Origin: Leucoraja ocellata
Taxonomy: Eukaryota
DNA: 64,000 nucleotides
Reading direction: 5' to 3'
NCBI GenBank assembly: GCA_036785375.1
Contig: JAWMAR010000026.1
Coordinates: 11,966,001 to 12,030,000, forward strand
The notes beneath the pieces were generated by a model that saw only the letters and a program-made list of their open reading frames with translations, ran no database searches and was not told where the DNA came from. The position numbers were made by a program, and so were the translations under genes. Positions 1,156 to 57,600 of the stretch are shown in pieces (the stretch's first letter is position 1; each line of letters opens with the position of its first letter).

Positions 1156-1156
1156 C

Positions 1157-10691: not shown

Positions 10692-13600
10692 ATGGAAACC
10701 AGTATGATATTTCACTTACTGGCAATCGTTGGGAATATTTGCATAGGCACGACTTTGTTCGTTATTCCATCTGCTTTAGCTTATAAAATGATTTCCGACA
10801 CGTTTACACCTTAATGTAGCTACATGTAAGGTCGTCCCTTTTATTCTACCGTCCGTTTGCCGTCATCAACATAATCACCTTTCCTTGACTGTGTTTCCTA
10901 ACAGGTGGGGAACAGATTTCGTACAACGTACAGCAAATGCCCAAAGAAGTGATTTTACACAAAGGAGGGAACACCACATTCTACTGCATATTCCCCATTT
11001 CTCAAGACCAATCTCGGGTAAGAGTCAAATGGTGGAAACAGGGCGAGAATGAATACCAACGTACAAGTACCGACGGCAGGAAACGTTTTGGCGTGAGTGG
11101 TCGAGCAAGCGGGTACTTTGAGTTGAAGAATGCAAAGATTCAAGATTCTGGAGTGTATCAGTGTTCGGTGATTCGTAAAGGAATGGCTCGAGGAAATTCA
11201 ACCGGATCACGTCTAATAGTATATGGTAAGCGAAAAATAATTGTTTTTTTATCATGGAATATAATGGTTTGCAAACCGAATCACTATGAAGATGTCCTTT
11301 AATGCCTTTTTGTGTATGGTATGTTCAGTATATCTGATCTGCCGCTCTATCTACATTCTGCGAACAAGAGGGTTGAACCTCCGCATGCCTATCCTTCTTT
11401 ATGAAATTCCGTTCCACTTCACTCATCTCGCCAAAATTGGAAACGCGATGTCCGATTTTATAAAATCAAATTAATATTTTTTAAATTCCTTCAAAGTTCA
11501 CCATGGATCTTTAACCTATGGAAATCCAATGTCCAAGAACATATTTCCTTGAATGTTCATTGAGTTGCAGTCGGTTGAATTGTACAGTTTTGCCCAAAGC
11601 AGGATGCAATCGCTCCAGTGTTGTCAGCATTAACTGAAAGTGAACCTCTGCTCATGTTCTACTTCTTTAGTTGGAGAATGATACTCAGATCATATATTTT
11701 AAATGGCCTTGGCCAATTCACTCTGGCATCACCTAATTAATCTCCCTAAATGTTATAATTCTGACGTGAAGCGCAATGGAACGTAATATACAAAGTTCAT
11801 AAATTCATGTTCATAAATCATAGGACCAGACTAAGACCATTCGACCCATCGAGGCTACTGGGCCATTCAATCATAGCTGATCAATATTTCCTTTTTAACC
11901 TAATTTTCCTGTCTTCGACTCATAACCCTTCACATAAAACTCAAAAACCCGTCAATCTCAGTTTAAAAATATAGAAGACTTGGCCGCCACGGCCATCTGA
12001 AGTAATTAGTTCCACAGTTTCATCACCCTCTGACTAAATAAATTCCCCAGTGTCTCCTTTCCAAACGAATGTCCTTTTGTTATGAGACTGTGCCCACTGG
12101 TCTTATACTCTCCCAGTCCTGGAAACACCCTGTCCACATCCACTCTATCCGGGTCCTTACACCATTTGGTAAGTTTCACTAAGGTCCCCTCCATATACTT
12201 CTAAACTACAGATTGCATCGGCCCAGATCCGTCAATCGCTCAATATACGTTAACCCAATCGCCCCCCTGGATAATTCTCGTAAATCTCATCTGAACTATT
12301 TTCAACGCTAGAAAATCCCTCCTCAGATATGGGGGCCCAAAATTGTTTGCAATACTCCAACGCGGTCTGACCATTGCCTTATGAAGCCTCAGCATTACAT
12401 CCCTGTTTTTTTTTTTAAACACTCCAGTCCTCTCTCAATAAATGCTAACGTTTTTAGTTACCGTATGTTGGATTTTAAAGAGGTAGGTAAACATCTTTTA
12501 TTGTATTGGGAAATTATGATAAAGCAATGTCAATAGACAGTAGACAATAGGTGCAGGAGTAGGCCATTCGGCCCTTCGAGCTAGCACCGCCATTCGCTGT
12601 GATCATGGCTGATTATACATAACCTGCCATCTCCCCATATCCCTTGACTCCGCTATCTTTAATAGCTGCATCTAACTCTCGCTTGAAAGCATCCAGAAAA
12701 TCTGCCTCTACCGTCTTCTGAGGCAGAGAATTCCACAGATTCACAACTCTGGGTGAAAAAGGTTTTCCTCATCTCCGTTCTAAATGGCCTACGCCTTATT
12801 CTTAAAATATGCCCCCTGGTACTGGACTCCCCCAACATCTGGCCAGGTTTCCTCCCTCTAACATGTCCAATCCCTTAATAGTCTTCTATGCTTCAATAAA
12901 TCCACTCCCATCCTTCTAAATTTCAGTGTATACAAGCCCAGCCACTCCATTCTTTCAACATATGACTGTCCCGCCAGCCCGGGAATTAACCTTCGAAATA
13001 TTACCAGAGTAAAACACAAATCCTACCACCTATTCACATTACAATAGCAGAAGACAAGGAAATATATGTCTCAGGAACATTCACTTGGAAACGTTTCTTA
13101 TCATAAACACGGTCTGAACACATTGCTACTTGGAGTCTCAGAGTTGCACAGCACAGGAACAGCCTTCCGGTCCTCCAAGTCCATCCGACCTATTTCTCCA
13201 TCTACTCAAATTCAATTTACCAGCGTTAGGTCCTTATCTACTACGAGTTGCCTATTATAATGTCTGTGAATCCCCAGGGCCTGATGGTCGGCATCCCAGG
13301 GTACTTACGGAAGTGGCTCTAGATATCGTGGACACATTGGTGATAATTTTACAATGTTCTATAGACTCGGGATCAGTTCCTGTGGATTGGAGGTTAGCAA
13401 ATGTCATCCCACTTTTCAAGATAGGTGGGAGAGAGAAAACGGGGAATTATAGGCCAGTTAGCCTGACATCGGTGGTGGGGAAGATGCTGGAGTCAATTAT
13501 AAAAGATGAGATAGACGCACATTTGGATAGCAGGATCAGGATCAGTCCGAGTGTGCATGGATTTACAAGGGGAAATCATGCTTGACTAATCTTCTGGAAT

Positions 13601-16547
13601 TTTTTGAAGATGTAAGTAGGAAAATGGACAAGGGAGAGCCAGTGGACGTAGTGTACCTGGACTTTCAGATAGCATTTGATAAGATCCCACATTGGAGATT
13701 AGTGGGCAAAATTAGGGCACATTGGGGGTAGAGTGCTGACATGAATAGAGAAGTGGTTGGCAGACAGGAAACAAAAAGTAGGGATTAACGGGTCCCTTTC
13801 AGAATGGCAGGCAGTGACTAATGGGGTACCGCAAGGCTTGGTGCTGGGACCGCAGCTATTTACAATATACATCAATGATTTGGATGAAGGGGTTCAAAGT
13901 AACATTAGCAAATTTGCAGATGACACAAAGCTGGGTGGCAGTGTGAACTATGAGGAGGATGCTATGAGAATGCAGTGTGACTTGGACAGGTTGTGGCAGT
14001 GGGCAGATGCATGGCAGATGAAGTTTAATTCGGATAAATGTGAGGTTATCCCCCCCCCCCCCCTCCCCCGCCCCACCCCCCACCCCCTCCAAGGACAGCC
14101 ATGACGGAACAATCACAACATTCGTTCAATGTTGAATCCAGAACTGCCGCGAATACTCTAAATGTTGATTTACGCTTTTGGTAAAGTTAAGGTTTACCAT
14201 TTATATTGTATGTCCTCGCCTATGAAGGTACGCCTGAAAGAGTTGATATAGTTCGCAGGATGTAATGTGTTGGTAAAACAACATATTTTCCTCACCATTT
14301 TCTGTGCCCCTGCTCTGCTTCTTCTGCAAAACCGACTCGCTTTCTCACTTGATCATTAATGATGCGCAGAAAACTCATCGTTATCTTTGAGTAAATAACT
14401 CAGAGAATCCCATCGTGGCAACATATGTCGAGATGTATTAGATTATTTATTCAAACTCTAAGAAGATTAATACATAAATATTTGAATGAAGCGTCATTAT
14501 CACTGAATCGGCAAGACTCGTGAAACACCGACCTGAAAGAGCCATTTGGACCAGGCATGAGCACGTAGTCTAAGTAATATCAAATACATTTTCCAATGCG
14601 TCATCATTACAACCCACTCGAGGTTAATAATAGCAACCCTTCAACGGCGTAATGTGATTTAATTTTGTTCATGTTCTGTTCTGCAGCAGTTCCAACTCCA
14701 CTGAAAATTTTCACAAAGACTCGTGAAAAGAATCCGGCCGCGAGTTGTATTCATGTGTGTGAAACAGCCGCATTCTATCCCGAGAATTTCACGCTTAATT
14801 GGTATAAAAATGGGAACGAAACAACATCGGAAATAAAGATCGAAACAAAGAAGAACGCCGAAGGATTGTATATGGTTTCCAGCTCTTTGATCGCGAGGCC
14901 GCCATTTCAGAGCGATAACAAATATACCTGTTTAATAACTCATGTCTCCCTCAATACTCCAGCCCAGGCTGTCATCGCTGGTTCCGAATGTAACCAAGGT
15001 ACAATGCCACCAAATCCATCCCCTGTTCAGTTCGTAAAAATAAATTACTATTTCTATTTGTTCCAGGCCGCGAGGAAAATTCACCTTAGTTCAATTGAAA
15101 GTTGCAGTTCTTTTTCACGACCGGATGCAATAAACCTGTTATCAATTCGTTGTACATTCGTTTTCAATGAAAATGTCTTATTTGCCCTCCAAAATAGAAA
15201 AAACAAATTTAAACATTTTGCCTCTCTATTGGGTAGTGTTGATGTTTCTTTCATGTTGCTTTCAAAAATGTTTCCCAATGCACCGTTGATTCCACACTTG
15301 GCGGCACAACTGATTTCAGGCGCTTAGGTTTTCCCTCACGCTTCCTCGGTTTTTATCCTGATGCCGAATCCTTTGCTTCGCCGTGATCACCTTCGCTAAA
15401 ATCCAACCACCCCTGCTCCCGAAATCCCTCGGTGCGGCATCCACTCCCACTGCCACCGTGACAAATTCAAGTACGGAATTCTAAAAGAAGAGAGGCTTCA
15501 ATTGAGGCGTCAATACCGTCGCCAACGGACACGGTATCATTTAGTAAATTGACAGAATAGGGGGAATGTCTTCAATTAGGAGGATTCAGGGAGAGAAGGG
15601 GGCTAGGAAGGGGAGAGGGGTTATGGAGGGAGGGAGTGGCTGTGGGTAGGGGAAAGGAGTGGGAGGGAGAGGTGATGGAGGGAGTGGGGAGGGGAGGAGG
15701 AGGGGAAAGAAGAGGAAGGATGTAGAGGAGGAGGAGGAGGGAATGCTGGGGCAAGAGGGGGAATAGAGGAGGATAGGGGTAGGATGAGGGATGGCGAGGC
15801 GCAGTTGGGGGAGGGTTGCCATGAATCGCGTCATAACGGGGATCCCTGGCGTCACAACGGGAACCCCTCAGCCACTCCTGCGCAGTTTGGGGATATGGGT
15901 CAGTGGCGGGATTTTGCCTTGGACGGGCCTGGTGTAGTCTCCTATAATCGTTGCACCTGTCAACTTAATACTATGTCCCTATTCTTTGATATTGCTATCC
16001 ATGCAAAAAGATTCTGACTGGCTACACTATCTATGTCTCTCATAATTTTGTATACTTCTATCAGGTCTCCCTTCAATCTTCCACATGTTTGTTCAATCCC
16101 CACTTGCAGCAAATGCCCCTTAATTCAGGCAACATTTTGTAAACTTCTTCACATCCTTCCTGTAATGAGGCGGCAATAACTGCACGTATTATTACAAATG
16201 CTTTCTAGCTAAAGCGCCAGGGAGCCGTATCATGACTCCCTGACGGTTCAATGCCGCGACCAATGAAGGCAAACACGCCACACGCCTTCTTTACCACTCT
16301 TTCTACTGGTGTTGTCACTTTCAGGAAGCTATTGATCACGACCTCAACATTCCTCTGCGGATCAATATTGTAAAGGGCCATTAACCGTATACTTTCCCTT
16401 TACATTTAACCATGAAATATATGGATTTACAATTGCATCTGGTGATTGTTAATTTAGATATCGAATTTAGCTATCAATATTATAAGCAATGGTGGGTACA
16501 TTAAATTCACCAGTTTTCCAATTATGTAAAACTCTCCCTTTCACCAA

Positions 16548-16627
<80 letters not shown>

Positions 16628-17867
16628 TAATTTGTTCCTATTATTTCTGCAGTTAATGCTTTCGCCTTCCACATTAGACCTGCTCTGGGCTTCCTGGTGC
16701 TCCTGATCCTGATTGGTGCCGTTATTGGGACGCACTGTCAGTTGCTGTTTTATAAAAGGTACGTTATATATGGAAAAAATATGTTTGTACAATATTTCAT
16801 GGAATTAGGAAAGATATTTGCGAACGTTTGTGTATGGCGCAGAGGATCATAAATATAATTATAATTTAAATCTGAAGGACTTGGACTGTGATGTAAATTC
16901 TTTGAAATGCCAATATATTCTTGGCAACTTAGCATGAAGAATTATACACAGCGTTGACAGTAAGAGGAACTGGTTGCAAGTAAATTAACTATAAGCATCG
17001 GTGAATGCTCAAGTTGTTTATTCTGGTTAAATCCAATGAGCTGGCAAGGAATCCAAGAGCCGGTAAGATCACGCTCCCTCTCGTGCAACTTTTGTCTTCA
17101 ATCATTCTTCGCCGGTAATATTCAATATTGAAGAGTGTTGAAGCGCAGATATTTTGTCAAATGCAAAGAGCAAAGTTTCATGTTTCTCTAAAGTCTGCAT
17201 CCAGACTGATGAAACATGCAAGTCATGCCAAGATGCATATTTTCCACGAGAAGATGCGAATATCCGTCGTCTTTTCACTTTCAATTTGAAATTATTTCCC
17301 GAAGAATAGGCGAAAATAGTGTAAAATTACCTGCAAAATCCTTATCAATTGTTTCTATGTTCCTCAATTGCATTTACACCTAAAACGCAGAGATAAAAAA
17401 ACGGCATAAATAAAATAAAACTTGAAAGAAATTCAGGTTCAGCCAGACCCAGATTCCCCCCCCCCCCCCCCCCCTCTTGCTCCCTCTCAATCTGGGTTTT
17501 AAACCAGCAATGAAAAATGATGACTTCAGTCTCTACAAATTTTACTTCATGCGATGAGTCCACTCACTCTTTTTTAAACTTAAAATACTTACGGTTTTCA
17601 ATCCCTTTGGAGTAAATGGGATAAAAGTAAACTTTTGTCTTTACTGAAATTTGATGTTATTTATAACTGTTGAATATATTTTATCCGCCTGAGAAAATAT
17701 CCTTAAACTATCTTCTATAGAACAAATGTTTGCATAATTAAATTGTACCGATAGTTAGCATGGTTTTCTCCACCCTCTCTTGTTTGTGCAGGGTCCATGT
17801 AAGAAAAAGCCATCAAATAGAGAGTGTTGGAAACCTCAAGCAGGATCAACCAAGCGCCACCCAATGA
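10692..17867 (+). CDS. Gene A: VJ-C1 Ig-superfamily receptor, activating type (SIRP-beta/NKp30-like architecture), 5 exons
   Basis: Exons: 10692-10746 (leader METSMIFHLLAIVGNICI, GC donor), 10905-11225 (V), 14687-14998 (C1), 16653-16758 (TM VNAFAFHIRPALGFLVLLILIGAVIGTHCQLLFYK), 17792-17867 (RVHVRKSHQIESVGNLKQDQPSATQ*). Intron phases 1,1,1,2 are all compatible and the frame is open throughout. Confidence 0.85.
10905..11225 (+). CDS. Gene A exon 2: V-set Ig domain with germline-joined J-like G strand
   Basis: ttcctaacag acceptor and G|gtaag donor, phase 1/1. Motifs TFYC, VKWWKQ, DSGVYQC, STGSRLIV. Confidence 0.93.
11810..14052. mobile_element. Cluster of degenerate CR1 fragments in gene A intron 2 (paralogous cluster 33480-35740 in gene B)
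   Basis: Minus-strand 3' fragments at 11810-12990; plus-strand RT fragment at 13268-14052 (SPGPDG, NYRPVSLTS, FADD). Confidence 0.85.
14687..14998 (+). CDS. Gene A exon 3: C1-set Ig domain
   Basis: ctgcag acceptor and G|gtac donor. C1 hallmarks VCETAAFYP, LNWYKNG, GLYMVSSSL, YTCLITH. Confidence 0.93.
15589..15815 (+). repeat. G/A-rich polypurine low-complexity tract
   Basis: gggagagaaggggg...gaggaggagg runs begin exactly where similarity to copy 2 ends. Confidence 0.85.
16549..16626 (+). repeat. (CA)n microsatellite just upstream of the gene A TM exon
   Basis: Perfect CA dinucleotide run. Confidence 0.97.
16653..16758 (+). CDS. Gene A exon 4: transmembrane segment with Arg (IRPALGFLVLLILIGAVIG)
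   Basis: Polypyrimidine plus ctgcag acceptor just after a (CA)n tract; AG|gtacgt donor; hydrophobic 20-mer. Confidence 0.8.
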
Positions 17868-25436: not shown

Positions 25437-25574
25437 ATTGCACTGTGGGACATCACGGGAGAATCGCGATGGAGTTAATCGCCACAGGAAGGAAAAGTGG
25501 TACAAAAATAAAGGAAATAATTGGATTTATGTGAACAGGCCTAGAATCGAAGATTTTCCTTCTGTTTCGTAGGA

Positions 25575-35300: not shown

Positions 35301-38300
35301 TAGGAAAATGGACAAGGGAGAGCCAGTGGACGTAGTGTACCTGGACTTTCAAAACGCATTTGATAAGATCCCACATTGGAGATTAGTGGGCAAACTTAGG
35401 GCACATGGTATTGGGGGTAGAGTGCTGACATGGATAGAGAAGTGGTTGGCAGACAGGAAACAAAGAGTAGGGATTAACGGGTCCCTTTCAGAATGGCAGG
35501 CAGTGACTAGTGGGGTCCCGCAAGGCTTGGTGCTGGGACCGCAGCTATTTACAATATACATCAATGATTTGGATGAAGGGGTTCAAATTAACATTAGCAA
35601 ATTTGCAGATGACACAAAGCTGGGTGACAGTGTGAACTATGAGGAGGATGCTATGAGAATGCAGTGTAACTTGGACAGATTGTGGGAGTGGGCAGATGCA
35701 TGGCAGATGAAGTTTAATGCGGATAAATGTGAGGTTATCCCCCCCCCCCTCCCCCGCCCCATCCCCACCCCCTCCAAGGACAGCCATGACGGGACAATCA
35801 CAACATTCGTCCAATGTTGAATCCAGAACTGCCGCGAATACTCTAAATGTTGATTTACGCGTTGGGTAAAGTTCTTACATAAGGTACTACCATTAATATT
35901 GTATGTCCTCGCCTATGAAGGTACGCCTGAAAGAGTTGATATAGTTTGCAGGATGTAATGTGTTGGTAAAACAACATATTTTCCTCACCATTTTCTGTGC
36001 CCCTGCTCTGCTTCTGCTGCAAAACCGACTCGCTTTCTCATTTGATCATTAATGATGCGCAGAAAACTCATCGTTATCTTTGAGTAAATAACTCAGAGAA
36101 TCCCATCGTGGTAACATATGTCGAGTTGTATTAGATTATTTATTCAAACTAAGAAGATTAATACATAAATATTTGAATGAAGCGTCATTATCACTGAATC
36201 GGCAAGACTCGTGAAACACCGACCTGAAAGAGCCATTTGGACCAGGCATGAGCACGTAGTCTAAGTAATATCAAATACATTTTCCAATGCGTCATTATTA
36301 CAACGCACTCGAGGTTAATAATAGCAACCCATCAACGGCGTAATGTGATTTAATTTTGTTCATGTTCTGTTCCGCAGCGCTTCCAACTCCACTGAAAATT
36401 TTCACCAAGACTAGTGAAAAGAATCCAGCCGCGAGTTGTATTCATGTGTGTGAAACAGCCGCATTCTATCCCGAGAATTTCACGCTTAATTGGTATAAAA
36501 ATGGGAACGAAACAACATCGGAAATAAAGATCGAAACACAGAAGAACGCCGAAGGATTGTATATGGTTTCCAGCTCTTTGATCGCGAGGCCGCCATTTCA
36601 GAGCGATAACAAATATACCTGTTTAATAACTCATGTCTCCCTCAATACTCCAGCCCAGGCTGTCATCGCTGGTTCCGAATGTAACCAAGGTACAATGCCA
36701 CCAAATCCATCCCCTGTTCAGTTCGTAAAAATAAACTACTATTTCTATTTGTTCCAGGCCGCGAGGAAAATTCACCTTAGTTCAATTGAAAGTTGCAGTT
36801 CTTTTTCATTTAAAATAAAACGACCGGATGCAACAAACCTGTTATCAATTCGTTGTACATTCGTTTTCAATGAAAATGTCTTATTTGCCCTCCAAAATAG
36901 AAAAACAAATTTAAACATGTTGCCTCTCTATTGGGTAGTGTTGATGTTTCTTTCATGTTGCTTTCAAAAATGTTTCCCAATGCACCGTTGATTCCACACT
37001 TGGCGGCACAACTGATTTCAGGCACTTAGGTTTTCACTCACGCTTCCTCGGTTTTTATTCTGATGCCGAATCCTTTGCTTCGCCGTGATCACCTTCGCTA
37101 AAATCCAACCACCCCTGCTCCCGAAATTGCTCGGTGCGGCATCCACTCCCACTGCCACCGTGACAAATTCAAGTACGGAATTCTAAAAGAAGAGAGGCTT
37201 CAATTGAGGCGTCAATACCGTCGCCAACGGACACGGTATCATTTAGTAAATTGACAGAATAGGGGGAATGTCTTCAATTAGGAGGGTTCACACCCATCCC
37301 CTCACATTGCAGTCGCACAGCCTATCAATGGCGTGCAATACAGCAGCGTTTAGGTCCCTAAACCAACAGCTCGTTTCGAAAATCAATTCAGCATAACAAA
37401 TTTGTCCGATATTTTAATTACTTCAGGGTATATATTGTAAGACTTAGGGCTTGTCCTACTTGGGCGTCATTTACGCGACATCATTTACTTACATTGTAAG
37501 TCGTCCTACGTATACAGTTTTTTATCTTACGCTGTCCTGTATTTGCGGTGCTTCCGGTAGAGTTGCCAATCCTGTCTCACTTTCACCACGAGCATTGAGC
37601 ATCACCCTACCCCCAACCGCCCCAAGTTCGGGAAGAATAGCTGGCAACCACCATAACATGTATTCCTACAAACCCTACAGGTTCTGCCGGCAAACTACCT
37701 TCGGTCGTGGCTTCTGGTTGTGCGGTGGGTGGATTGTTTATTTCAGTGCTAATTATCGTTATTTGGTTGCGGTGCCGCAAGCAGAAAAATAAGGGTAAGT
37801 TCTAGCGATAACAATGAACTGTAATATTAATCGTTGGGGTCAACGATAGTGACTGTTTCAGCAACATCTCAGTTCAGTCAATGCCTTTAATCGGAACTAA
37901 TACCCGAATAGCCAGTCCATTGAGAGTGCACAATGGGGAAAGGCCAATCAAGGACACTGTGAGGTCACCAATGGCTAAGTAACAGAGATTCGTGGTCTGC
38001 TATAAACTTTCAAAGTATAGATTGTCTCTTACAGGCAGCACAAAGTAGTGTACAAGTAACACAAGCACCCAACGTTCACAAAATCGTCCGAATCCATGAG
38101 CAGGATAAAGAAAATACAAACATATACAAATTAGGAGAGGCATGGGTAGGGTAGACTGTCAGAACGATTTTCCCGGGAATAAAATATCAAATACAAGAGG
38201 GTATAGATTTAGGTGTGAGGGGTAACGTTTGGAGATGTAGGTGGGCCGAAGGGTGTTTTCTTCTATCGTCTCAAATTCCCACGTATTTCCTTGTAACCTA

Positions 38301-39526
38301 TTATGCACGTCATTTTTCCTGCCAATCGCCTACTGTGAGTTAAGAGACTGTTCATTTGACCTAACCAGTGTTCGCTGCAATGTGGCAGAATCTGGAGCAA
38401 TGGCGTAAACATATGCGATCAAAAAATTCCATAGTGGAAGCTGCTAACGTCACAATTGAACCAAGGATGCCGAATCCACGAGGCAATTAGATGAACTACT
38501 GCAGCGTAGTAATACTTCTGGCTTCATTCTGAGTATACGTAGATTTGTAATTACTGTCTGAAATTCAGTAAATGATTCTGCCTTTTTTATACTATTTTTT
38601 CCAGGTAAAGAGGAAAGTTTTGGTGAACCAAATCGTCACGAGCAGCTGGTATATTTATGTTTTTATTGCAGCATGGCATTTACAGAGGGCAATGCTATAA
38701 AATAAGCGATCTGACAAACATATTCGAACCGTTTATTTATATATAGCGAACACACTTGGCCATTTCAATGATAGATTGAACTCAAAATAGATAACATTTC
38801 AATGGCCAAGTGTGTAAAACCAATAGCTTATTCTTAAAACGTATACCGGTAAAACACTGTCATTACGTTGCTTTATTCATTGTATTTGAAAAAAGACATT
38901 TTGGCTTTTGAAGCCACAGTTCTTGTAAAGTCATTGATTCATAGTACCCCCCAATTTACCCCTTTGAACATCAACTCGGCGGCCACTGTTTTATTTTGGC
39001 GATTTTATGTACATAAATGCATACGTGAATGCACCTCGTCTTTATTTTGGGAAAAAAACATTTACAATGCGACAGAAGGACATGAAAGCGTCGAGTCACA
39101 TAATAAGAACTTTTCTTTCCGAATGATGCAGGGAGCAGAAGCTGCGACCGGTTATATCGCCGCCACGCATTTGAGCAAACCCAATTGCATTCCAAAACGA
39201 AAACGGGATGGTGTGCAAACCTCGTATGGTCAGGTGAGGCTGTTTGATTAGCAAAATAGATAACAATCAAAGCACGTGAAGGCTGACGGTTTCACATGCG
39301 ACTTGAGAAGCAATATCAAAAGCTAGTAAAACAATGAATTAACTGTGTTTAAAAAAACTGCTTACAGAGAGTGCGGGAGAATTCAAGTGACGAGCTGTCG
39401 TATGCGAACTTAGCATTCACTGGCAAGAGGAATGTGAGAAAATGCACAGAAAAGGCAGAGTATGCCGAGCTACAGATAAACAAACACAGCGGAGCAGCAG
39501 AGGTTGCCTATTCAACAGTAAGATGA
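32361..39526 (+). CDS. Gene B: VJ-C1 Ig-superfamily receptor, inhibitory type with ITIMs (SIRP-alpha-like tail), 7 exons
   Basis: Exons: 32361-32415 (leader, GC donor), 32574-32894 (V), 36378-36689 (C1), 37681-37794 (TM GSAGKLPSVVASGCAVGGLFISVLIIVIWLRCRKQKNK), 38605-38648 (GKEESFGEPNRHEQL), 39132-39233 (GAEAATGYIAATHLSKPNCIPKRKRDGVQTSYGQ), 39368-39526 (RVRENSSDELSYANLAFTGKRNVRKCTEKAEYAELQINKHSGAAEVAYSTVR*). Phases 1,1,1,1,0,0. Confidence 0.88.
32574..32894 (+). CDS. Gene B exon 2: V-set Ig domain
   Basis: 321-nt phase 1/1 exon with 7 nucleotide differences from the gene A V exon. Confidence 0.93.
36378..36689 (+). CDS. Gene B exon 3: C1-set Ig domain
   Basis: ccgcag acceptor, G|gtac donor; FYP, W and YTCLITH motifs. 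Confidence 0.93.
37681..37794 (+). CDS. Gene B exon 4: uncharged transmembrane segment plus basic stop-transfer
   Basis: ccctacag acceptor, G|gtaagt donor; VVASGCAVGGLFISVLIIVIWL followed by RCRKQK. Confidence 0.85.
39368..39526 (+). CDS. Gene B last exon: ITIM-bearing cytoplasmic tail
   Basis: cttacag acceptor. LSYANL and VAYSTV fit the ITIM consensus (I/L/V/S)xYxx(L/V); AEYAEL is ITIM-like. Ends at TGA 39524-39526. Confidence 0.85.
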   Translation, partial: RVRENSSDELSYANLAFTGKRNVRKCTEKAEYAELQINKHSGAAEVAYSTVR

Positions 39527-45200: not shown

Positions 45201-45429
45201 CTAGACTAAGTGGGACCTGTTGGGTCCCATGTTCACATGGGAGGGCTGGTCCCCCGACGCAATATGCCATCTCTCCACCAATTCCAATATTGGTGGCCAA
45301 TGGGGGGGGGGGTTCTGGAGTGCTGGTATGGGTTCTTTGGGTGGCAGCTCAGTCCCTCAAGCCTGATCTGTTGGCAGCTCACTCACGGCTGGTGGGCTGG
45401 CAGTTGACTCATGACTATTCCTTGAAATT

Positions 45430-45875: not shown

Positions 45876-46257
45876 TGAAACCACCATAAAGCCACACAAA
45901 ACACCAAATTCATAATTCAGTAGACATTCAATGTGTTCAGTTGATTCACAGCTCAGACAGAGTGGTGACCTCTCCCTCCCCATCATGCAGAGACTGAGCC
46001 ACACCCACATTTCTGGGTTTTATAACCCCTCCCCCTCCCACCGGAAAAGGTGTGGCTTTCATGGGGTGATTGACAGGAGAGAGATTCTCAGCATTCTTTA
46101 AACACTAATAACACTTTTATTTTTAATTGATGGGAATTCTCTGCACCTGCTCAGCGAAGGGGGACTGCGTAACTTGGCCAAAACTCACAGACATAAGTGG
46201 TAGCGTTTTTATTAAAAAAACAATATAGAGTGCAAACTGGAAGTAAGTGCATTTGCA

Positions 46258-47780
46258 TTAGTGCCTTTTAACTTCAAGCCAAAGCACCCAAGCCGCCATT
46301 TGCAGTAAGTAGTGCCTTTCAACTTCAAGCCAAAGCACCCAAGCCACCATTTGCAGTAAGTTGTGCCTTTCAACTGCATGTCACCATTTGCCGTAAGTAG
46401 TGCCTTTCAACTTCAAGCCAAAGCACCCAAGCCACCATTTGCAGTAAATAGTGCCTTTCAACTTCAAGCCAAAGCACCAAAGCCACCATTTGCAGTAAGT
46501 TGTGCCTTTCAATATCAAGTCAAAGCACCCAAGCCACCATTTGCAGTAAGTAGTGCCTTTCAACTTCAAGCCAAATCTGCCGAGCCACCATTTGCAGTAA
46601 GTAGTGCCTTTCAACTTCAAGCCAAAGCACCCAAGCCACCATTTGCAGTAAGCAGTGCCTTTCAACTTCAAGCCAAAGCTCCCAAGCCACCATTTGCAGG
46701 CAGTGCCTTTTTACATCAAACAAACCATATTTTCATTTCCAAACCACATTAAGGGGACTCACAGCTGTGTAGACATTGATTCAGTGTTATTCGGAGCTCA
46801 GAGAGACGTGCCCCTTGGCTTCATCCATCTTGCAGAGACTGAGTGAGGCACACCACTTCCTGGTTTTATAGTCCCTCCCCTCCCTCCAGCAGGGGCAGCA
46901 GAGAGAATAGTGCCTTTCATCTTCATGCCACCATTTGCAGTAAGTAGTGCCTTTCAACTTCAAGCCAAAGCACCCAAGCCACCGTGTGCAGTAAGAAGTG
47001 CCTTTCAACTCAAGCCAACTCACCCAAGCCACCATTTGCAGTAAGTAGTCCCTTTCAACTTCAAGCAAAGCACCCAAGCCACCATTTGCAGTAAATAGTC
47101 TTTCAACGTCAAGCCAAAGCACCCAAGCCAGCATTTGCAGTAAGTAGTGCCTTTCAAATCCAAGCCAAAGCACCCAAGCCACCATTTGCAGTAAGTAGTG
47201 CCTTTCAACTTCAAGTCAAAGCACCCAAGCCACCATTTGCAGTAAGTAGTGCCTTTCAACTTAAAGCCAAAGCACCCAAGCTACCATTTGCAGTAAATAG
47301 TCTTTCAACTTCAAGCCAAAGCATTCAACGTCAAGCCAAAACACCCAAGCCACCATTTGCAGTAAGTAGTGCCTTTCAAATTCAAGCCAACGCTCCCAAG
47401 CCACAATTTGCAGTAAGTAGTTAGTGCCTTTCAACTTCATGCCAACATTTGCAGTAAGTAGTGCCTTTCAACTTCAAGCAAATGCACCCACGCCACCATT
47501 TGCAGTAAGTCGTGCCTTTCAACTTCAAGCCAAAGCACCCGCCACCATTTGCAGTAAGTAGTGCCTTTCAACTTAAAGCCAAAGCACCCACGCCACCATT
47601 TGCAGTAAGTAGTCCCTTTCAACTTCAAGCCAAAGCACCCAAGCCACCATTTGCAGTAAGTAATGCCTTCCAACCTCAAGCCAAAGAACCCAAGCCACCA
47701 TTTGCAGCAAGTAGAGCCTTTCAACCCCAAGCCAAAGCACCCAAACAGCCATTTGCAGGCATTGCCTTTTTACTTCAAAC
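46258..47780 (+). repeat. 51-bp minisatellite in two blocks
   Basis: Unit gtgcctttcaacttcaagccaaagcacccaagccaccatttgcagtaagta. The blocks are separated by a spacer at ~46715-46908 that recurs at ~47775-47963. Confidence 0.92.
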
Positions 47781-51661: not shown

Positions 51662-54600
51662 TTATTCCATTCTCGTTTCTCTCCGCGCATATTCTTGCTC
51701 GTTTTGGATTTCTCCTGTGGCGCTCAATCCGTCGTCATTAGCAACGTGTTTTATCTGAAAAGGAAACGCTTATAAATATCGACAACTATCTAATTGGTTA
51801 CATTTTGGTTTGTTTAAAATGCACATTTCAAAGACAGGAGAACAATGTTGATGGCGAAACACGGGCAATGTCTGAACAAACCTAATCCCTTAAAAACCGA
51901 CGAACTACAGATAGTTGAAGTTTTCTTTCCGAGCAACTAATCTGAAACCTGGATATGTTTCCACTGCATAAAAACAGAAAATTCATCAGACCAGTCAGCA
52001 CCTCTGGGAAGAGCACTATTCAGATTTTCTAGGCTACGTCGCTTCATCAGTTTAGTTGTTATTCGGAGAAAAGGCGAGGGAGCGACGTGCAGTACAAATA
52101 GCAAATTGCATTTGCAGAAGGATTTAAAATGGCATCGATATCAGCACTTTACGGTTCTGCATTGTGTTACATGCATTGTTAATGATGAGCTGGTGGGTTA
52201 GCCCTACCTGATATAACTTAATGAATAGTGTATCGACAACGGAACTAGTACTATATAAGAAATGAATAAAGGAATTTCTGGAATTGCACGTTAGGTTTAG
52301 CTTGTAATTCATACAATTAACCCTATAGAAATATTATGGGGTCTACCGAGAATATTCGCAGGAGTTAAACCTTCTGGTGTTGACCTTGTCAGCATCTTAA
52401 AGCTATTCCCAGATTCTAAACTTAACGGTTCGATGAAGGTACCCAATTGTCATCTGCGTTTTTTGTCGAATGATCTTCCCAATTTTATTTTCTCTTCACG
52501 CCACATATACTGATTTTAATATTTTTCAATACACTATTCGACAGATGCGTCAGATCGTTCAATATACAACAATGTCTATTTCCGCTTAGGCCTCTTCCCG
52601 AAATTAATATATACACTTACCAACTTTCCATGGCCACCGATCCTTTTGTATTTACCTTGAAATGGACGATATTTAATTAATCACAATGGTTAAAATCTTC
52701 ACTCTATTACCATTTCTGATCGTTTAATATTTTTTATAATGAACATAAAACATAATATGAAATTACATTTTATTCGGGCAAAGCAATGAATTTCGGCAAA
52801 ATGTTGACGGCTACATAGATGCTCCGTGAATTTTGCTGGCATCGCTAATTGACAGAATGAAAGTGGTGAACGTTCTGGCATTTTCTATCTCTCTGGCATT
52901 TTGCAAACTCTTCGGTGCAAATGTGTAAACAACGCTTAAAACAAAATCAATAGATTGTCGAGCTAAATTGATAATCCGCTGTTATTTAAATCACGGGAGT
53001 GAACCATCCCACCATGCAGCACCGCACTGTTCTTCCGGTTTATATAATCCATCCTGACTATTAACAACGAACTCCGGAATTCACAGTACAGACAAGCACT
53101 GATCTTTCTCAGTCCCATGGATCTGTGTTACCAAAATACTTCTCCCCTAAAGCGTCTGCTCCGTGGTATAACAGTAATATTAATGTATGGAAAATCTTTT
53201 TTTTTTTCTCCATCTTGACTTTTCAAAAGGTAAGGGCCCCTTACAACTTTAGGGTATAATGTCTACGTTTACTTCCAGTTATTGAGGGACAGATTTGAAA
53301 AAGGCAAATGCCGTGGGTTGGAATCCAACTGAGCCCTAACCGGGTAAACACCGTCTGTCTCTAATGGACTTTAAACGACCACTTCATTCTCTGCCGTTTC
53401 ATAATCTCTTGTATTTTGTCGAAACCTGTGTTGTAAATAAAAACTTTTAAACCATGGATCAAATTAGCGAAGTATCGTATCAGAATGTACTCCTACCCCC
53501 ACAATCATAAACCGAGGTATTCCGATTGTGGCATCGTAAATAATACATTAACACGCCGTGTTTTGTCTGACACTGAACTGCAGGGCAATTCGGATTATAG
53601 CATTGAGTAACTGGGGAATTCTGGGTCATATTACTAAACCATACCTTCTCGAATAAGCTTTGGAAAATCTTCGCCATGGGATGAATTTCAGATGATGGCG
53701 ATAACCCCCTGCGATTATGTAAAGATTTGTTGAAAGGGATTCTGCGTGGTATTAGGTGGATAGAAATGGCTTTCATTATCTGAGATTGTTTTTAGCTTTT
53801 GCCTTCCCCAAATTATGCTGGACACGTGAATTCAAGAACTGCCTTCGGTTGTTTGCGGTCGTTTCACGGGGCACGGGAATCCACAGCAATTCTCGAAATT
53901 GTATGGATCGGTCATTTAGAGTCCAATCATAATATATCCCTGAAAGTCGAGATTTCTCACTGCACATTACCACAAAACGTGTTTATTTAACTTTTGTATA
54001 CATCCTTAAATTATATTTATAGAAACATAGAAACATAGAAAATAGGTGCAGGAGTAGGCCATTCGGCCCCTCGAGCCTGCATCGCCATTCAATATGATGA
54101 TCATGGCTAATCATCCAATTCAGTATCCTGCATCTGCCTTCTCTCCATACCCCCTGACCCCTATAGCCACAAGGGCCACATCTAACTCCCTCTTAAATAT
54201 AGCCAATGAACTGGCCTCAACTACATTCTGTGGCAGAGAATTCCAGAGATTCACCACTCTCTGTGTAAAAAATGTTTTTTCTCATCTCAGTCCTAAAATA
54301 TGTCCCCTTTATCCTTAAACTGTGACCCCTTGTTCTGGACTTCCCCAACATCGGGAACAATCTTCCTGCTTCTAGCCTGCCCAACCCCTTAAGAATTGTG
54401 TAAGTTTCTATAAGATCCCCCCTCAATCTTCTAAATTCTAGCGAGTACCTTTATGACCTAGGTTACCATTTTAAATAGCGTGGAACCACGGAGCAGCAAA
54501 ATGACCAAACAATTCAATTACTTATCAGTGCAGTCGACAGGGACCTCAGTGAATACGATATGTAAATTATAAGCATAATACTTACAGTTATTCTTCAGTT

Positions 54601-57600
54601 TGCAGAATCCGACAATGACAGTCATAATGAACAAAAATGCGATTACAACCGCCGGACGGACAGAACTCCAGATGGCTGTTTCTGCAAGTTTAGAATGACA
54701 GATACTGAATTCTACTTTGAGCCGACCATTGTTTGTTTTAAAAAATCTCTTTAGAATTTGGAGATTTGCTTTCGCTCATAATTACATGCAAAAACATTAT
54801 GCTAAAATCGGATATTAGAAACAACGTTGTCCCGAAGAGTGGAATGAATAAATTGCCACCGAGTTTAATTTCAGACAAATAAGTAGGATGGAGGATGAGG
54901 GGGTGGGGGTGGATATATTCCTTCACTTTTAATTGGAATGCAGCAGCACACAAAGCTCCATCGTCTTTGGGAAGTGCTGATTTGGTTGAGGTCCAAGGCA
55001 AATCTTCTTTCCCTTATGTACAGTATCAAGTCCTTTTTACCGACACGCCTGCAGATCATAAGGATATTGACCTACGGTCATTATCATATGGTAAATACAC
55101 TGTAGTAAGTCCCAGGCCGCCCTGTCCTCTCAAAAAACGTTTAGCGATTGGCAATAAATGGCTCCCCACCATCGCCCCCCACATGAAATTATTATATTGA
55201 GTGAAACAGCACGGAAACCGGCCATTGGCCCAGCTCGTCCATGCCGATCAAAATAACCTATAGTAATTGTTGAAACCCACCATACGGCGCTTGACCAGAA
55301 ACAAGTTATGAAACAGTTCCCTGCTTTAAATCCAAGCAGGTTGGAAGGGGCGTCATTTTTTATACACAGGATTACACATCGGGGTGAATCCACAATGATA
55401 GGAACAGGAATCCAATAAAGAGCTGCAAGTGGTTGTGTGTGGAGCAAACGTCAAAACCGCTCCCTCTAATTCGCTTCCACAATTTGAAAATAACAAATTT
55501 TGCGGGAGCTTTATGGAGAATTGTGTCAATGCTATTTACGAGGATAGTATTATTTGCTTCTCAATTTTCATGATTTATCATCCACAAACTCAGAATTGAA
55601 TCGTAGGTTACAAAACGTCAAAGTGTTTTTAAGTCATACCTTTGAAAACGACGTTGAATATGCGACTCTTTGGAGGGAGATATGAGACACCAGATAAATG
55701 TAAACCTTTCCATTCGGCTCCGACTGTGTCATGGACAATGAAGTAGAAACTGCGTACAGCCCTTCAGTATGTTTCTGTTTAACGCTATTAGCCTCAGTTG
55801 TAACTGCAGTGCCATGTTTATGCCATACAAGAGTTAACTTGCTCGGGTGAAACTCGGACGTTTCACTGACGTGAAGGGATAAAGGGAATAAAAGCAGTAG
55901 CTGTGTAGGAAATAACTGCAGATGCTGGTTTAAACTGAAGATAGACAGTTTCTCTGGATGGAAGGAATGCATGACATTTCGGGCTGTGACCCTTCTTCAG
56001 ACTGAGAGAAAGAAGTAGCGTCCAAGGCCATTTCCCCCTGGCTTGTAATGGAAACTTTCTGACAATTAGCTGAATTCTAGAACTTTTTAAAAAGCGTCTC
56101 CAAAATGAAAGGGTTACACCAATTTAGGGCGGTAACTAGACATCTGTTAGCAAATTCAGTAACATACACTAAACAATTGATTTAGTATGAGGCTTCCGGG
56201 GAATGCTTAGTAACGAGCAAACAATGCAAAATATTTCGAGCGAATATGAATGCCATCCCTTCACATTTCGACATTTACCTGAAATAACGAGTCGCTCTGG
56301 GACCCGTTAGAGTAGACAGTGTTTACGATGATATGAATGGCATTTGTGATCCTTTTAAAACAAACGTTGTCAATATCAACACACTCAGATGTCAATAATA
56401 AGTTATAACATTATACGGTGTTTCAAGTCATACCTTGGTCAGGTTTGCGAAGGGCGTGCGTGGCAATGGCGGGTCTTTGGAGGGAGATGTGTATCACCAG
56501 ACAAATGTAAATATTCCCGCTGGCCTCCGACTGCGTCATGGATAATGAACTGGAAGCCGTGTACAGCCCTTCACTATTTTTCTGTTTAATGGTATCGACC
56601 TTAGCTGTAACAGCAACGCTATTTTTATACCATAGATGGGTTAGATCACCCGGGTAAAACTCGGCCGTTTTACAGACAAGCGTTGTAGCTGCAGATGAAT
56701 TGCTCTCGGATATCCAGTTAATCTTCAGTGGAGTTGGAAGGGCTGTGGGACAGAGTGCGAAAATATCATATTACTGGAATTAAATTAAACAGACAGTAGG
56801 AGAAGCTTGTTTAGAAATCCACATATTTTACCCGATCCCTTGAAGACAGAAGTTAACGAATTATTGATATCTGTTACCTCATACAGCGGAGCGCAAGAAC
56901 CGCCGCGGAAAGTTAATTTTGTTTCAACTCAACCAGCGTTCAATGACATGAAATGTGGAATCTTTTGGAGGTGCAATTGATAGTGATTTATGCTGGATCG
57001 TATTTGAAGGTGTGATGAAAGCTATTGTTACTTGTTTTGAAATACATCTTATTTGCTGTATTTTAACATATATTTTCGGCATAATAATATTGAACCTTGT
57101 ACATTCAATAAAACGAGCATCAAATTGTATGGTTTTCACATAATTTCATGGGGCCCTTCTCTCTCACAAATCGGAACTAATATAGAGATATAATTCTTGT
57201 GCAATATTCTCAAGTATTCTGTCCTTTCGTCACTCACCACATACTGTTAGTTCTGACCCTGTTCCTTCTCCGCTAATTTCCCCCTGACGCATGATTACAC
57301 AGCGATAGTTTCCCGAATCCTCGTAGGTCGTGTTCAGTAAATCAAAATATCCGCCTGATCTATTTTTGACGGTGAATCGCTTTCTGCCATCAGCGTCGGT
57401 TTGTATATATTCATTCTCGCCCTGTTTTCGCCAACGTACTTCGATTCCCGAACTGTCATCCGCAAGTGGGATTATGCAGTGAAAGGTGACGTTTGCTCCC
57501 TTCAATATAACCTTTCGTTCTGGAATTTGGGTAACGTGGATCGCAGTTTTTTCAGCAGCTGTTGGAAAAACGTTTAAGATTTGGTTAATTATATTCAATG

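What the first reader, a model, noticed from the sequence alone, without database searches (positions are those of the whole stretch)
10905..57558. Non-rearranging antigen-receptor-like architecture: germline VJ domain plus one true C1 domain plus TM
All three genes encode the V domain and its J-like G strand in a single 321-nt exon (gene C GEGTGSELTV, like the J motif GxGTxLxV and NKp30). This is followed by a single C1-set domain (FYP, W, YxCxV/IxH). C1 domains are restricted to Ig, TCR, MHC, B2M, tapasin, SIRP, B7H6 and a few others. VJ-C1-TM is the layout of a TCR chain and the predicted pre-RAG ancestor of antigen receptors. I found no RSS next to the V exons. The family may be uncharacterised or annotated only as SIRP-like or light-chain-like.
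Basis: partly seen in the sequence, partly recalled or inferred. Interest (0 to 1): 0.8.

Follow-up and report, generated by a model that had tools for sequence, protein, structure and literature searches.

The report
Shark-ray SIRP-like paired receptor genes
Three neighbouring genes of a ray-like fish each encode a small immune receptor with one antibody-like variable domain, one constant domain and a membrane anchor; they look like an undescribed, shorter cartilaginous-fish version of the known SIRP receptor family, not a wholly new kind of antigen receptor.

Summary
Genes A (+), B (+) and C (-) each have a split leader, a 321-nt phase-1/1 V exon that includes a J-like G strand (GxGSxLxV), one C1-set exon and a TM exon. 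There is no RSS anywhere in the window.

The VJ-C1-TM layout is real, and the C1 call holds by Pfam, PDB profiles and an AF2 model. But these genes belong to a large family found only in chondrichthyans in my searches. Its whole-protein profile matches human SIRPα best among solved structures. Its four-tyrosine tail is collinear with bird and bat SIRPα tails (0 of 2000 shuffles reach the score). It has inhibitory and Arg-TM activating forms.

- **Gene B** is inhibitory, with an ITIM tail.
- **Genes A and C** are the activating type.
- **A and B** share a 6.6-kb 5' module at 97% identity and then switch to different signalling modules.

Taken alone, the V and C1 domains do not sit inside SIRP. 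Their best single-domain matches are VNAR/TCR/IgL V domains and Igλ C/UrIg2.

Synteny could not be tested, and no RNA reads covered gene C. I found no paper describing this family. Other first-stage notes of this scan flag similar genes elsewhere in the same genome.

The parts
10692..10746 (+). Gene A leader exon (METSMIFHLLAIVGNICI, phase 1). The donor is GC, not GT.
   Evidence: It aligns with batoid leaders such as MSSSMFLFLAVSGNIYI.
10905..11225 (+). Gene A V exon, 321 nt, phase 1/1, with the J-like G strand GNSTGSRLIV inside the exon.
14687..14998 (+). Gene A C1-set exon, 312 nt, phase 1/1. It ends ...GSECNQ, which places a Cys close to the membrane.
16653..16760 (+). Gene A TM exon with Arg (FHIRPALGFLVLLILIGAVIG), the activating type. 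It sits directly after a (CA)39 repeat.
   Evidence: It is 97% identical to residues 92-126 of the spliced product P0007.
17792..17867 (+). Gene A terminal exon (VHVRKSHQIESVGNLKQDQPSATQ, then stop), with no tyrosine.
   Evidence: 25 of 25 residues are identical to the C-terminus of P0007.
8957..15588 (+). 5' module of gene A (upstream region, leader, V, C1). It is duplicated at 30622-37290 at 97% identity, and homology stops sharply at 15588/37290.
32361..32415 (+). Gene B leader exon, with the same GC donor as gene A.
32574..32894 (+). Gene B V exon, 321 nt. It differs from gene A's V exon at 7 nt, giving 6 amino-acid changes.
36378..36689 (+). Gene B C1-set exon.
   Evidence: The AF2 model has pLDDT 83 and all 50 Foldseek hits are C1 domains.
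37681..37794 (+). Gene B TM exon (ASGCAVGGLFISVLIIVIW LRCRKQKNK), with no charged residue. This is the inhibitory-type TM.
   Evidence: (35.8 bits).
38605..38648 (+). Gene B cytoplasmic exon 1 (KEESFGEPNRHEQL).
   Evidence: Its phases fit the neighbouring exons.
39132..39233 (+). Gene B cytoplasmic exon 2 (…TGYIAATHL…TSYGQ).
   Evidence: (13.1 bits).
39368..39526 (+). Gene B last exon, with LSYANL, AEYAEL and VAYSTV, then stop.
   Evidence: (33.3 bits).
57742..57787 (-). Gene C leader exon (MFLVLILSLSVIICT), with a GT donor and phase 1.
57238..57558 (-). Gene C V exon, 321 nt, with the J-like strand GEGTGSELTV.
   Evidence: The AF2 model has pLDDT 87.
56434..56742 (-). Gene C functional C1-set exon, 309 nt, with both Cys, FYP and YICLVIH.
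   Evidence: (131 bits).
55652..55870 (-). Degenerate duplicate of gene C's C1 exon. Both Cys are lost, the A/B strands are missing and there is no in-phase acceptor.
   Evidence: (77% DNA identity to 56474-56677).
54586..54681 (-). Gene C TM exon with Arg (IWSSVRPAVVIAFLFIMTVIVGF), the activating type. The tail exon that should follow was not found.
58971..59281 (-). Relic of a further copy upstream of gene C: a leader-like stretch and the first 23-24 codons of a V exon.

Best explanation
The window holds part of a cluster of germline (non-rearranging) paired immunoreceptor genes. They belong to a family that my searches found only in chondrichthyans and that is the nearest relative of the SIRP (SHPS-1) family of bony vertebrates.

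Each gene encodes a split leader, one short V domain with a built-in J-like G strand, one C1 domain, a TM and a tail.

- Gene B is the inhibitory form. Its TM is uncharged and its tail carries tyrosine motifs collinear with SIRPα's four. Inferred: once phosphorylated, these motifs recruit SHP-1/2-type phosphatases.
- Genes A and C are activating forms. Each has an Arg in the outer part of the TM. Gene A has a short tyrosine-free tail; gene C's tail exon was not found. Inferred: they signal through an ITAM adaptor such as an FcRγ or DAP12 homologue.
- A and B share a 97%-identical 6.6-kb 5' module (leader, V, C1) joined to unrelated 3' signalling modules. One ligand-binding head is therefore wired to opposite signals, as in SIRPα/β and other paired receptors.

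Shown here: exons, phases, domain types, absence of RSS, family range, tail similarity, and module exchange. Inferred: signalling partners, ligand, cell type, and expression of these particular copies.
For: Gene models have consistent phases and AG/GT sites.

Domain types:
- Pfam gives V-set and C1-set.
- The AF2 model of gene B's C1 exon matches only C1 domains in the 50 Foldseek rows listed.
- There is no RSS.

Family range:
- 20 of 22 candidates and 26 of 8000 candidates passed. Every named one is chondrichthyan, covering sharks, rays and Callorhinchus.
- The exhaustive HMMER search found 119 representatives at E<=1e-30.
- I looked up names for 30 of the 150 listed. 17 are chondrichthyan. 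Of the 13 others, 5 are SIRP or SIRP-like: bird, bat, pig and two lungfish.

Links to SIRP:
- SIRPα 2wng is the best PDB hit for the family profile: 5.9e-25, against UrIg2 at 1.4e-21 and SIRPγ at 8.4e-21.
- The Atlas nearest clusters are SIRPα, score 0.97.
- The tail aligns collinearly with bat and bird SIRPα over all four Tyr motifs.
- The tail HMM scores 34.9 and 31.1 bits on those tails. 0 of 2000 shuffles each reach that; the shuffled maxima are 11.4 and 10.3.

Paired forms:
- Seven of the thirteen distinct tail-less family sequences listed (two Callorhinchus ones among the six exceptions) have Arg where the ITIM-bearing ones have Gly, for example WILRCAMG against WALGCAMG.
- Gene A's Arg-TM exon and last exon occur spliced to a C1 domain in P0007, which comes from a 955-bp assembled contig.
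- The break between the A and B modules is sharp.

Trees: both the A/B lineage and the C lineage include sharks and batoids. In the V tree the clades are supported at 99*, 95* and 98*. The C1 tree agrees at 88-93.
Against: - There is only one C1 domain, while SIRPs have two.
- The V-only profile does not put a SIRP V domain among its best 60 PDB hits. Its best single-domain hits are VNAR, IgL and TCR V.
- The C1-only profile scores Igλ C (54.7 bits for one domain) and UrIg2 above SIRPα, which gets 73 bits over two domains at rank 25.
- The C1 tree links the family to the SIRP d2 clade with only 26% SH-aLRT support.
- Four RNA runs gave zero depth on gene C's exons.
- The leader donor of A and B is GC.
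- Gene B's first tyrosine motif (GYIAAT) is not a canonical ITIM.
Confidence: 0.68

Rival explanations
1. This is an independent relic of the pre-RAG antigen-receptor chain. On this view the VJ-C1-TM lineage is sister to TCR/Ig chains and not a SIRP relative, and the SIRP-like tail is shared ancestry of ITIM tails or a shuffled-in module.
For: - The V-only profile's best single-domain PDB hits are antigen-receptor V domains: VNAR 3e-10, Fab L 3.4e-9, TCRβ 8.9e-9 and TCRα 1.1e-8. Several alignments run through the J region.
- The C1-only profile's best single domain is Igλ C at 54.7 bits, with UrIg2 second overall. UrIg2 is also the best hit of the single C1 exon.
- One V plus one C1 plus a TM is the layout of a TCR chain.
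- A and B carry a Cys just before the membrane (…SECNQ), as does P0007 (…SKCRQ).
- Signalling modules are demonstrably exchanged in this cluster, so the tail need not share the ectodomain's history.
Against: - The whole-protein profile, the Atlas features and the tail all point to SIRP.
- The V-G-strand/hinge/C1 junction aligns best with SIRPα d1-d2, including CEtAeFyPedltltWYKng against CESHGFSPRDITLKWFKNG.
- SIRPs are themselves argued to be antigen-receptor relatives (PMC2785349), so this reading is not cleanly separable from the main one.
- No linkage to MHC or Ig/TCR loci was shown.
Confidence: 0.2
2. These are B7/butyrophilin-type ligands (V plus C), as some automatic names suggest: CD276 homolog, NCR3LG1-like.
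For: - Automatic names.
- The V exon of gene A hits PD-L1 V domains at about 2e-3.
- The Atlas structure rows include PD-L1-like and butyrophilin clusters with TM-scores of 0.46-0.53.
Against: - Pfam C1-set beats C2-set_2 by about five orders of magnitude.
- The C1 model matches only MHC II β2, IgL C and TCR C domains in the 50 rows listed.
- The family has a J-like strand, SIRPα-like ITIM tails and Arg-TM partners. These are features of receptors, not of B7 ligands.
Confidence: 0.03
3. The three copies in this window are decaying or silent members of the family. The family itself would be real but these loci not expressed.
For: - The GC donor of the leader is shared by A and B.
- Exon divergence between A and B (2.18 and 1.89 substitutions per 100 bp) equals intron divergence (2.20). 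6 of the 7 V-exon changes are non-synonymous.
- Gene C carries a dead C1 copy, and its tail exon was not found.
- Depth was zero on gene C's exons in 4 RNA runs.
- No RNA run is on record as holding the stretch.
Against: - All coding exons are open with matching phases.
- GC-AG introns are a known functional minority class (general knowledge).
- P0007 shows that gene A's 3' module is spliced into an mRNA-like contig.
- Only about 5-25% of each run was read, and the tissues are unknown.
Confidence: 0.12

Closest known systems
SIRPα/SIRPβ/SIRPγ (SHPS-1 family) of bony vertebrates
   Same: - A V domain with its J-like strand in one exon, followed by a C1-set domain.
- An inhibitory member whose tail has four collinear tyrosine motifs (YAxL…, xYAxxQ, LTYAxL, EYAxxQ).
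- Activating partners with a basic TM residue and a short tail.
- Clustered paralogues with near-identical ectodomains.
- SIRPα is the best PDB match of the family profile.
   Different: - One C1 domain instead of two.
- A short V domain of 106 aa with no clear C'' strand in the model, which does not pull SIRP V in a V-only search.
- The basic residue is an Arg near the outer end of the TM. From recall, SIRPβ1 has a mid-membrane Lys.
- The ligand is unknown, and orthology and synteny are untested.
UrIg and UrIg2 (non-rearranging elasmobranch VJ-C genes; PMC12227049 section 7 and passages read; PDB 9dmx)
   Same: - A germline VJ exon with a split leader, followed by C1-type domains.
- Found in elasmobranchs, with no RSS.
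- UrIg2 is the best PDB hit of the single C1 exon and the second-best hit of the family profile.
- C-exon duplication recurs in both.
   Different: - UrIg2 has 9-11 C domains and UrIg several. This family has one.
- This family has SIRPα-like ITIM tails and Arg-TM partners.
- It also occurs in Callorhinchus, whereas the paper says UrIg genes are kept in elasmobranchs.
- Linkage to the MHC or the antigen-receptor complex was not examined here.
TCR chains / Ig light chains
   Same: - The V(J)-C1 order, and for TCR also the TM.
- The best single-domain PDB hits of the V-only and C1-only profiles are TCR, IgL and VNAR V domains and Igλ C.
- A Cys next to the membrane in A and B.
   Different: - V and J are fused in the germline and there is no RSS.
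- The family has its own ITIM tail or a single TM Arg.
- No evidence of heterodimer partners.
NKp30 (NCR3)
   Same: A non-rearranging VJ-type V domain, with an Arg in the TM of activating forms. This is from recall and from passages of PMC12227049.
   Different: - NKp30 has no C domain.
- NKp30 is not among the best 60 PDB hits of the V-only profile.
PRARP (Fu et al. 2019, J Immunol)
   Same: It is described as a non-rearranging VJ-bearing IgSF family proposed as an antigen-receptor-precursor remnant. I saw only a citing passage in PMC10751288.
   Different: It could not be compared. The paper is not held, and no PRARP sequence was available from any tool.

Membership tests
SIRP family | N-terminal V-set domain with a J-like G strand encoded in the V exon | tested here: met
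   'GtgskLtv' aligns with SIRPα 'GAGTELSV'.
SIRP family | Two membrane-proximal C1-set domains (V-C1-C1) | tested here: not met
   There is one C1 exon per gene. Gene C's second copy is degenerate. Family members show one C1, except skate P0040 with two near-identical ones.
SIRP family | Inhibitory member with a four-tyrosine cytoplasmic tail (two ITIM pairs) | tested here: met
   This was tested at sequence level only. The alignments with bat and bird SIRPα are collinear. The tail HMM scores 34.9 and 31.1 bits, and 0 of 2000 shuffles reach those scores. Gene B keeps all four positions, but the first is not a canonical ITIM.
SIRP family | Activating partners with a basic TM residue and a short tail, and ectodomains close to the inhibitory member | tested here: met
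   Gene A (Arg-TM, 24-aa tail) against gene B: V 94% and C1 97.5% amino-acid identity. Seven of thirteen distinct tail-less family sequences carry the Arg.
SIRP family | Orthology by conserved synteny with the SIRP locus | not tested
The window holds no non-family genes.
SIRP family | V domain binds CD47 | not testable with these tools
   This needs binding assays.
SIRP family | V and C1 domains each nest with SIRP d1 and d2/d3 in phylogeny | tested here: inconclusive
   In the C1 tree the family lies next to the SIRP d2 clade, but with 26% support. The V-only and C1-only PDB profiles do not favour SIRP. No TCR, Ig, UrIg or NCR3 sequences were available for the trees.
Rearranging antigen receptors (TCR/Ig) | Separate V and J segments flanked by RSS | tested here: not met
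   J is fused in the V exon, and no RSS occurs in 64 kb.
Rearranging antigen receptors (TCR/Ig) | V followed by a C1-set domain | tested here: met
UrIg/UrIg2 | VJ exon with split leader, followed by three or more C1-type domains | tested here: not met
   The split leader and VJ exon are present, but there is only one C1. The definition comes from PMC12227049, section 7.
UrIg/UrIg2 | Linkage to the MHC (UrIg) or to the Ig/TCRαδ complex (UrIg2) | not tested
   No flanking genes are available. MHC notes of this scan lie on other pieces.
NKp30/NCR3 | Single VJ domain joined directly to stalk and TM, with no C domain | tested here: not met
   A C1 exon is present in all three genes.
B7/butyrophilin | V domain followed by a B7-type (C2-set_2/C2-set_3) constant domain, with ligand-type tails | tested here: not met
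   C1-set 2e-10 against C2-set_2 2.9e-5 and C2-set_3 1.9e-4. The fold matches are C1 only. The tails carry ITIMs.
PRARP | Sequence kinship with chicken PRARP genes | not testable with these tools
   The paper and its sequences are not held. Search one search found nothing relevant, and only a citing passage was seen.

The most novel reading that the evidence does not exclude
This chondrichthyan V(J)-C1-TM family is the ancestral form of the SIRP family and a living sister of the pre-RAG antigen-receptor chain. It has one VJ exon, one C1 exon and a TM, with activating members that use a TM Arg. On this reading the V-C1-C1 SIRPs of bony vertebrates arose by the kind of C1-exon duplication seen decaying in gene C and fresh in skate P0040. 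[quoted passage not shown]
Probability: 0.18. Interest if true: 0.8.

Novelty: new variant of a known kind. Interest (0 to 1): 0.45.

Why it matters
SIRPs are the only non-antigen-receptor cell-surface receptors with a V(J) domain followed by true C1 domains, and they have been proposed as relatives of the antigen-receptor precursor (PMC2785349).

A large SIRP-like family present in sharks, rays and a chimaera has the minimal one-V, one-C1, TM layout and both inhibitory and Arg-TM forms. This would place SIRP-type receptors at the base of jawed vertebrates, alongside Ig, TCR and MHC.

It gives a second non-rearranging VJ-C1 system, besides UrIg/UrIg2, to compare with rearranging receptors. The window also shows in one place how paired receptors are made: one 97%-identical ligand-binding module is joined to two unrelated signalling modules.

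If synteny and domain trees tie the family to SIRP, the origin of SIRP's second C1 becomes testable. If they tie it to Ig/TCR, the family becomes a candidate precursor-like chain.

Tried and rejected
**RNA evidence.** The run search listed no RNA holder of the stretch. I laid 4 RNA runs on gene C (51900-57890). Only two repeats took reads, at 53900-54499 and 55900-56099. All exon bins had depth 0. This is no proof of silence.

**Tail search in the word-indexed protein database.** The P0005 tail (residues 268-374) gave 5 hits among 83 candidates, all paralogues from the same species. The test says nothing about SIRPα, because the tool needs shared exact 5-mers.

**Synteny.** Notes of the scan gave no flanking genes.

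**Literature.**
- Searches for PRARP, 'antigen receptor precursor'/nonrearranging, SIRP with V-set/C1-set/cartilaginous fish, SIRP/shark/paired receptors, SIRP plus 'cartilaginous fish' (17 papers, none on chondrichthyan SIRPs by title, 2 checked by passage) and NCR3/shark/NKp30 found no description of this family.
- One search was badly framed and uninformative.
- The UrIg paper (PMC10530332) is not held.
- Supplements are closed. Table S1 and figs S1-S2 of PMC12227049 may list other VJ-C genes, and I could not see them.

**Leader scan.** A hydrophobicity scan with a GT-donor filter missed the A/B leader because its donor is GC. It was found later by similarity.

**A possible relic of an inhibitory TM exon in gene A.** The stretch at 15809-15916 ('SLGIWVSGGIL') has E 0.42 in tblastn and 1.4 bits in the HMM, and shows no DNA homology to gene B's 3' region. 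I treat it as chance.

**B7/tapasin/MHC readings.** The readings suggested by automatic names were rejected on the domain and tail evidence.

The joined (spliced) protein of A, B or C was never built or searched. All searches, folds and trees used single exons or stored homologues.

Full report
**1. What the window is.** It is vertebrate DNA with 35-55% GC, many LINE/SINE fragments and no N. In domain trees both gene lineages fall inside batoid subclades, at 95* and 98* SH-aLRT. The source is therefore most likely a ray or skate. No annotated protein in the searched collections is closer than about 75% to these genes, apart from unnamed assembled contigs.

**2. Checking the observation.** Three V exons of exactly 321 nt lie at 10905-11225 (+), 32574-32894 (+) and 57558-57238 (-). 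Each has an AG acceptor, a GT donor and phase 1 at both ends.
- Pfam calls them V-set at 1.5e-8, 4.4e-8 and 7.6e-7. Ig_3 is about equal and I-set is weaker.
- The G strand with its J-like motif is inside each exon, and the donor follows directly.
- A scan of the whole window for heptamer/12-or-23/nonamer found nothing, against 0.12 expected from shuffles.

Each gene has one good C1 exon: A 14687-14998, B 36378-36689 and C 56742-56434.
- Pfam C1-set gives 2e-10 and 7.6e-11 for A and B, five orders better than C2-set_2.
- The family C1 HMM gives 130-131 bits for all three.
- An AF2 model of gene B's C1 exon (pLDDT 83.1) hits only C1 domains in the 50 Foldseek rows listed: MHC II β2, IgL C, λ5 and TCR C.

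The ORF at 55634-55972, which might be taken for gene C's C1, is a degenerate tandem copy of that exon. It shows 77% DNA identity over 204 bp, both cysteines are replaced, the A/B strands are absent and there is no in-phase acceptor.

The V model of gene C (pLDDT 87.1) is a short V domain. It matches VNAR, Igβ, NCAM d1, antibody V and SIRPα V domains.

**3. Gene models.**
- *Gene B.* Leader 32361-32415, V, C1, uncharged TM 37681-37794, and three cytoplasmic exons at 38605-38648, 39132-39233 and 39368-39526. All phases fit. The tail ends with LSYANL, AEYAEL and VAYSTV.
- *Gene A.* Leader 10692-10746, V, C1, a TM exon with Arg at 16653-16760, and a last exon at 17792-17867.
- *Support for gene A's 3' end.* P0007 is a 150-aa product of a 955-bp assembled contig. 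It reads C1, then 'V', then the same TM (34 of 35 residues), then the same tail (25 of 25 residues), exactly across the predicted junctions. Its C1 is only 57% identical to gene A's, so it comes from a paralogue that carries the same 3' module. It shows that this module is spliced and used.
- *Gene C.* Leader 57787-57742, V, C1, the dead C1 copy, and an Arg-TM exon at 54681-54586. Its tail exon was not found.
- *Caveat.* The leader donor of A and B is GC.

**4. Module exchange.** A and B are 97% identical over 6.6 kb (8957-15588 against 30622-37290), with 135 substitutions in 6,684 aligned columns. Homology ends abruptly, and a sensitive comparison finds nothing further. The same head is therefore joined to an activating 3' module in A and an inhibitory one in B. 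Divergence is the same in exons and introns, about 2 per 100 bp. Six of the seven V-exon changes alter the protein, but the counts are too small for a selection test.

**5. The family.**
- *Word-indexed searches.* Searches with the C1 ORF and then with a 10-member alignment gave 20 hits among 22 candidates and 26 hits among 8000 candidates. All named hits are chondrichthyan: Heptranchias, Heterodontus, Mustelus, Scyliorhinus, Stegostoma, Mobula, Hypanus, Hemitrygon, Pristis, Narcine and Callorhinchus. Their automatic names are inconsistent.
- *Exhaustive search.* The exhaustive HMMER search found 2433 representatives at E<=0.001, 629 at E<=1e-10 and 119 at E<=1e-30.
- *Domain architecture.* Scanning with family HMMs shows V, one C1, then TM and/or tail almost throughout. 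The exceptions are skate P0040 (two near-identical C1 domains), some V-TM-tail forms and some merged gene models.
- *Names looked up.* I looked up names for 30 of the 150 listed. 17 are chondrichthyan, and these include every single-C1 member I checked. Of the 13 others, 5 are SIRP or SIRP-like (birds, a bat, pig, two lungfish). The remaining 8 are long multi-Ig proteins whose scores add up over many domains.
- *Clustering.* Within a species the members lie on one chromosome-scale contig.

**6. Which known family?**
- *Evidence for SIRP.* The full-length family profile hits human SIRPα best (2wng, 5.9e-25), then UrIg2 (1.4e-21), SIRPγ (8.4e-21) and Ig heavy chains. The alignment runs from the F-G strands through the J-like motif and hinge into d2, where 'CEtAeFyPedltltWYKngvev' lies against 'CESHGFSPRDITLKWFKNGNEL'. 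The ESM Atlas places P0005 beside SIRPα clusters at 0.97 with 215 of 256 features shared. Pairwise BLASTP of shark or ray members against bat or bird SIRPα aligns V+d2, and separately C1+TM+tail, with all four tyrosine motifs in order. The family tail HMM scores 34.9 and 31.1 bits on those tails, and none of 2000 composition-preserving shuffles exceeds 11.4.
- *Evidence against a simple SIRP assignment.* The V-only profile ranks VNAR, IgL and TCR V as its best single domains and shows no SIRP V in the top 60. The C1-only profile ranks Igλ C (54.7 bits for one domain), UrIg2 and IgM above SIRPα. The quick C1 tree puts the family (84) beside the SIRP d2 clade (98*) with only 26% support.
- *Reading.* I read this as a SIRP-family relative with fast-evolving or ancient ectodomains. 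It is not a demonstrated orthologue.

**7. Paired forms.** Seven of the thirteen distinct tail-less family sequences listed (two Callorhinchus ones among the six exceptions) carry Arg near the outer end of the TM, where ITIM-bearing members have Gly. Genes A and C have that Arg and gene B does not. Both the A/B lineage and the C lineage contain sharks and batoids, and each contains inhibitory and activating members. The two lineages therefore predate the shark-ray split, and switching between signalling types has recurred.

**8. Expression.** No RNA run is on record as holding the stretch. Four RNA runs, each read to about 5-25%, gave zero depth over gene C's exons and heavy depth only on two repeats. 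P0007 is the only transcript-like evidence, and it concerns gene A's 3' module.

**9. Literature.**
- The link between SIRP's V-C1-C1 layout and antigen-receptor evolution is published (PMC2785349, passages read).
- UrIg and UrIg2 are the described elasmobranch non-rearranging VJ-C genes (PMC12227049, abstract, section 7 and passages; PMC10751288, passages). Neither paper mentions SIRP in the text I could search.
- My searches found no paper describing chondrichthyan SIRP-like V-C1 receptors. The library is partial and supplements were closed.
- PRARP could not be compared.

**10. Verdict.** The architecture claim is right. The claim of an uncharacterised family holds in so far as the annotation is only automatic. 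The best placement is a single-C1, chondrichthyan variant of the SIRP paired-receptor kind. A minority reading remains that it stands closer to the antigen-receptor stem. Other first-stage notes of this scan report similar genes and SIRPα-like tails elsewhere in this genome. I used them as leads only.

Noticed in passing
window 58971-59281 (-): There is a relic of a further family copy upstream of gene C. It has a leader-like stretch (ITAMFLFQLLSLSMM) and the first 23-24 codons of a V exon (AEETAIHVTQIPEIVVILMGSQI), then breaks off. At DNA level 58984-59347 is 69% identical to 57498-57863.
   Followed up: partly
window 16549-16626: A perfect (CA)39 microsatellite ends about 25 bp before the acceptor of gene A's Arg-TM exon. 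It lies inside the region where A and B stop being homologous.
   Followed up: no
window 13130-14104 and 34817-35820 (+): Reverse-transcriptase ORF fragments of a LINE sit inside the V-C1 intron of both A and B, so the insertion predates the duplication. Other RT ORFs lie at 5906-7669 (587 aa), 25883-26974 and 29543-30406.
   Followed up: no
window 54020-54448; copies at 811-1154, 8616-8959, 12531-12897, 18904-19243, 34202-34567, 57884-58258: A SINE-like repeat took hundreds to thousands of RNA reads on both strands in all four runs, most running on into unlike sequence. It looks like an abundant transcribed repeat family. A shorter repeat at 55900-55990 behaves the same way.
   Followed up: no
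window 45430-45877 and 46259-47758: Two minisatellite arrays lie between genes B and C: 48-bp units (9.4 copies) and 51-bp units with 102/153/414-bp higher orders.
   Followed up: no
window 7707-7930 and 24001-26000: A GC-rich 36/64-bp tandem repeat lies at 7707-7930. A 2-kb block of 55% GC, the highest in the window, lies at 24001-26000. Neither was examined.
   Followed up: no
P0040 (Amblyraja radiata, 493 aa): This skate family member has V-C1-C1-TM-tail with two nearly identical C1 domains (branch lengths 0 and 0.056). It is a fresh C1-exon duplication that gives a SIRP-like three-domain layout, and it parallels the decayed duplicate in gene C.
   Followed up: partly
P0063, P0107, P0121, P0127, P0148, P0159, P0037: These family representatives have V, TM and a SIRPα-like tail but no detectable C1 domain. 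They may be a real V-only subgroup (NKp30-like layout) or incomplete gene models.
   Followed up: no
J-like motif of the family (window 11190-11215 in gene A): The conserved 'GNGTGS' of the J-like strand contains an N-x-T glycosylation sequon. Genes A and B have NST there, and gene C (GEGTGS) has none.
   Followed up: no
window 1-5251 versus 17947-27680: The region downstream of gene A repeats the first 5 kb of the window at 96-99% identity, interrupted by insertions. The A-type unit, including its 3' module, is therefore probably repeated just upstream of the window, where another first-stage note places an intact gene.
   Followed up: no
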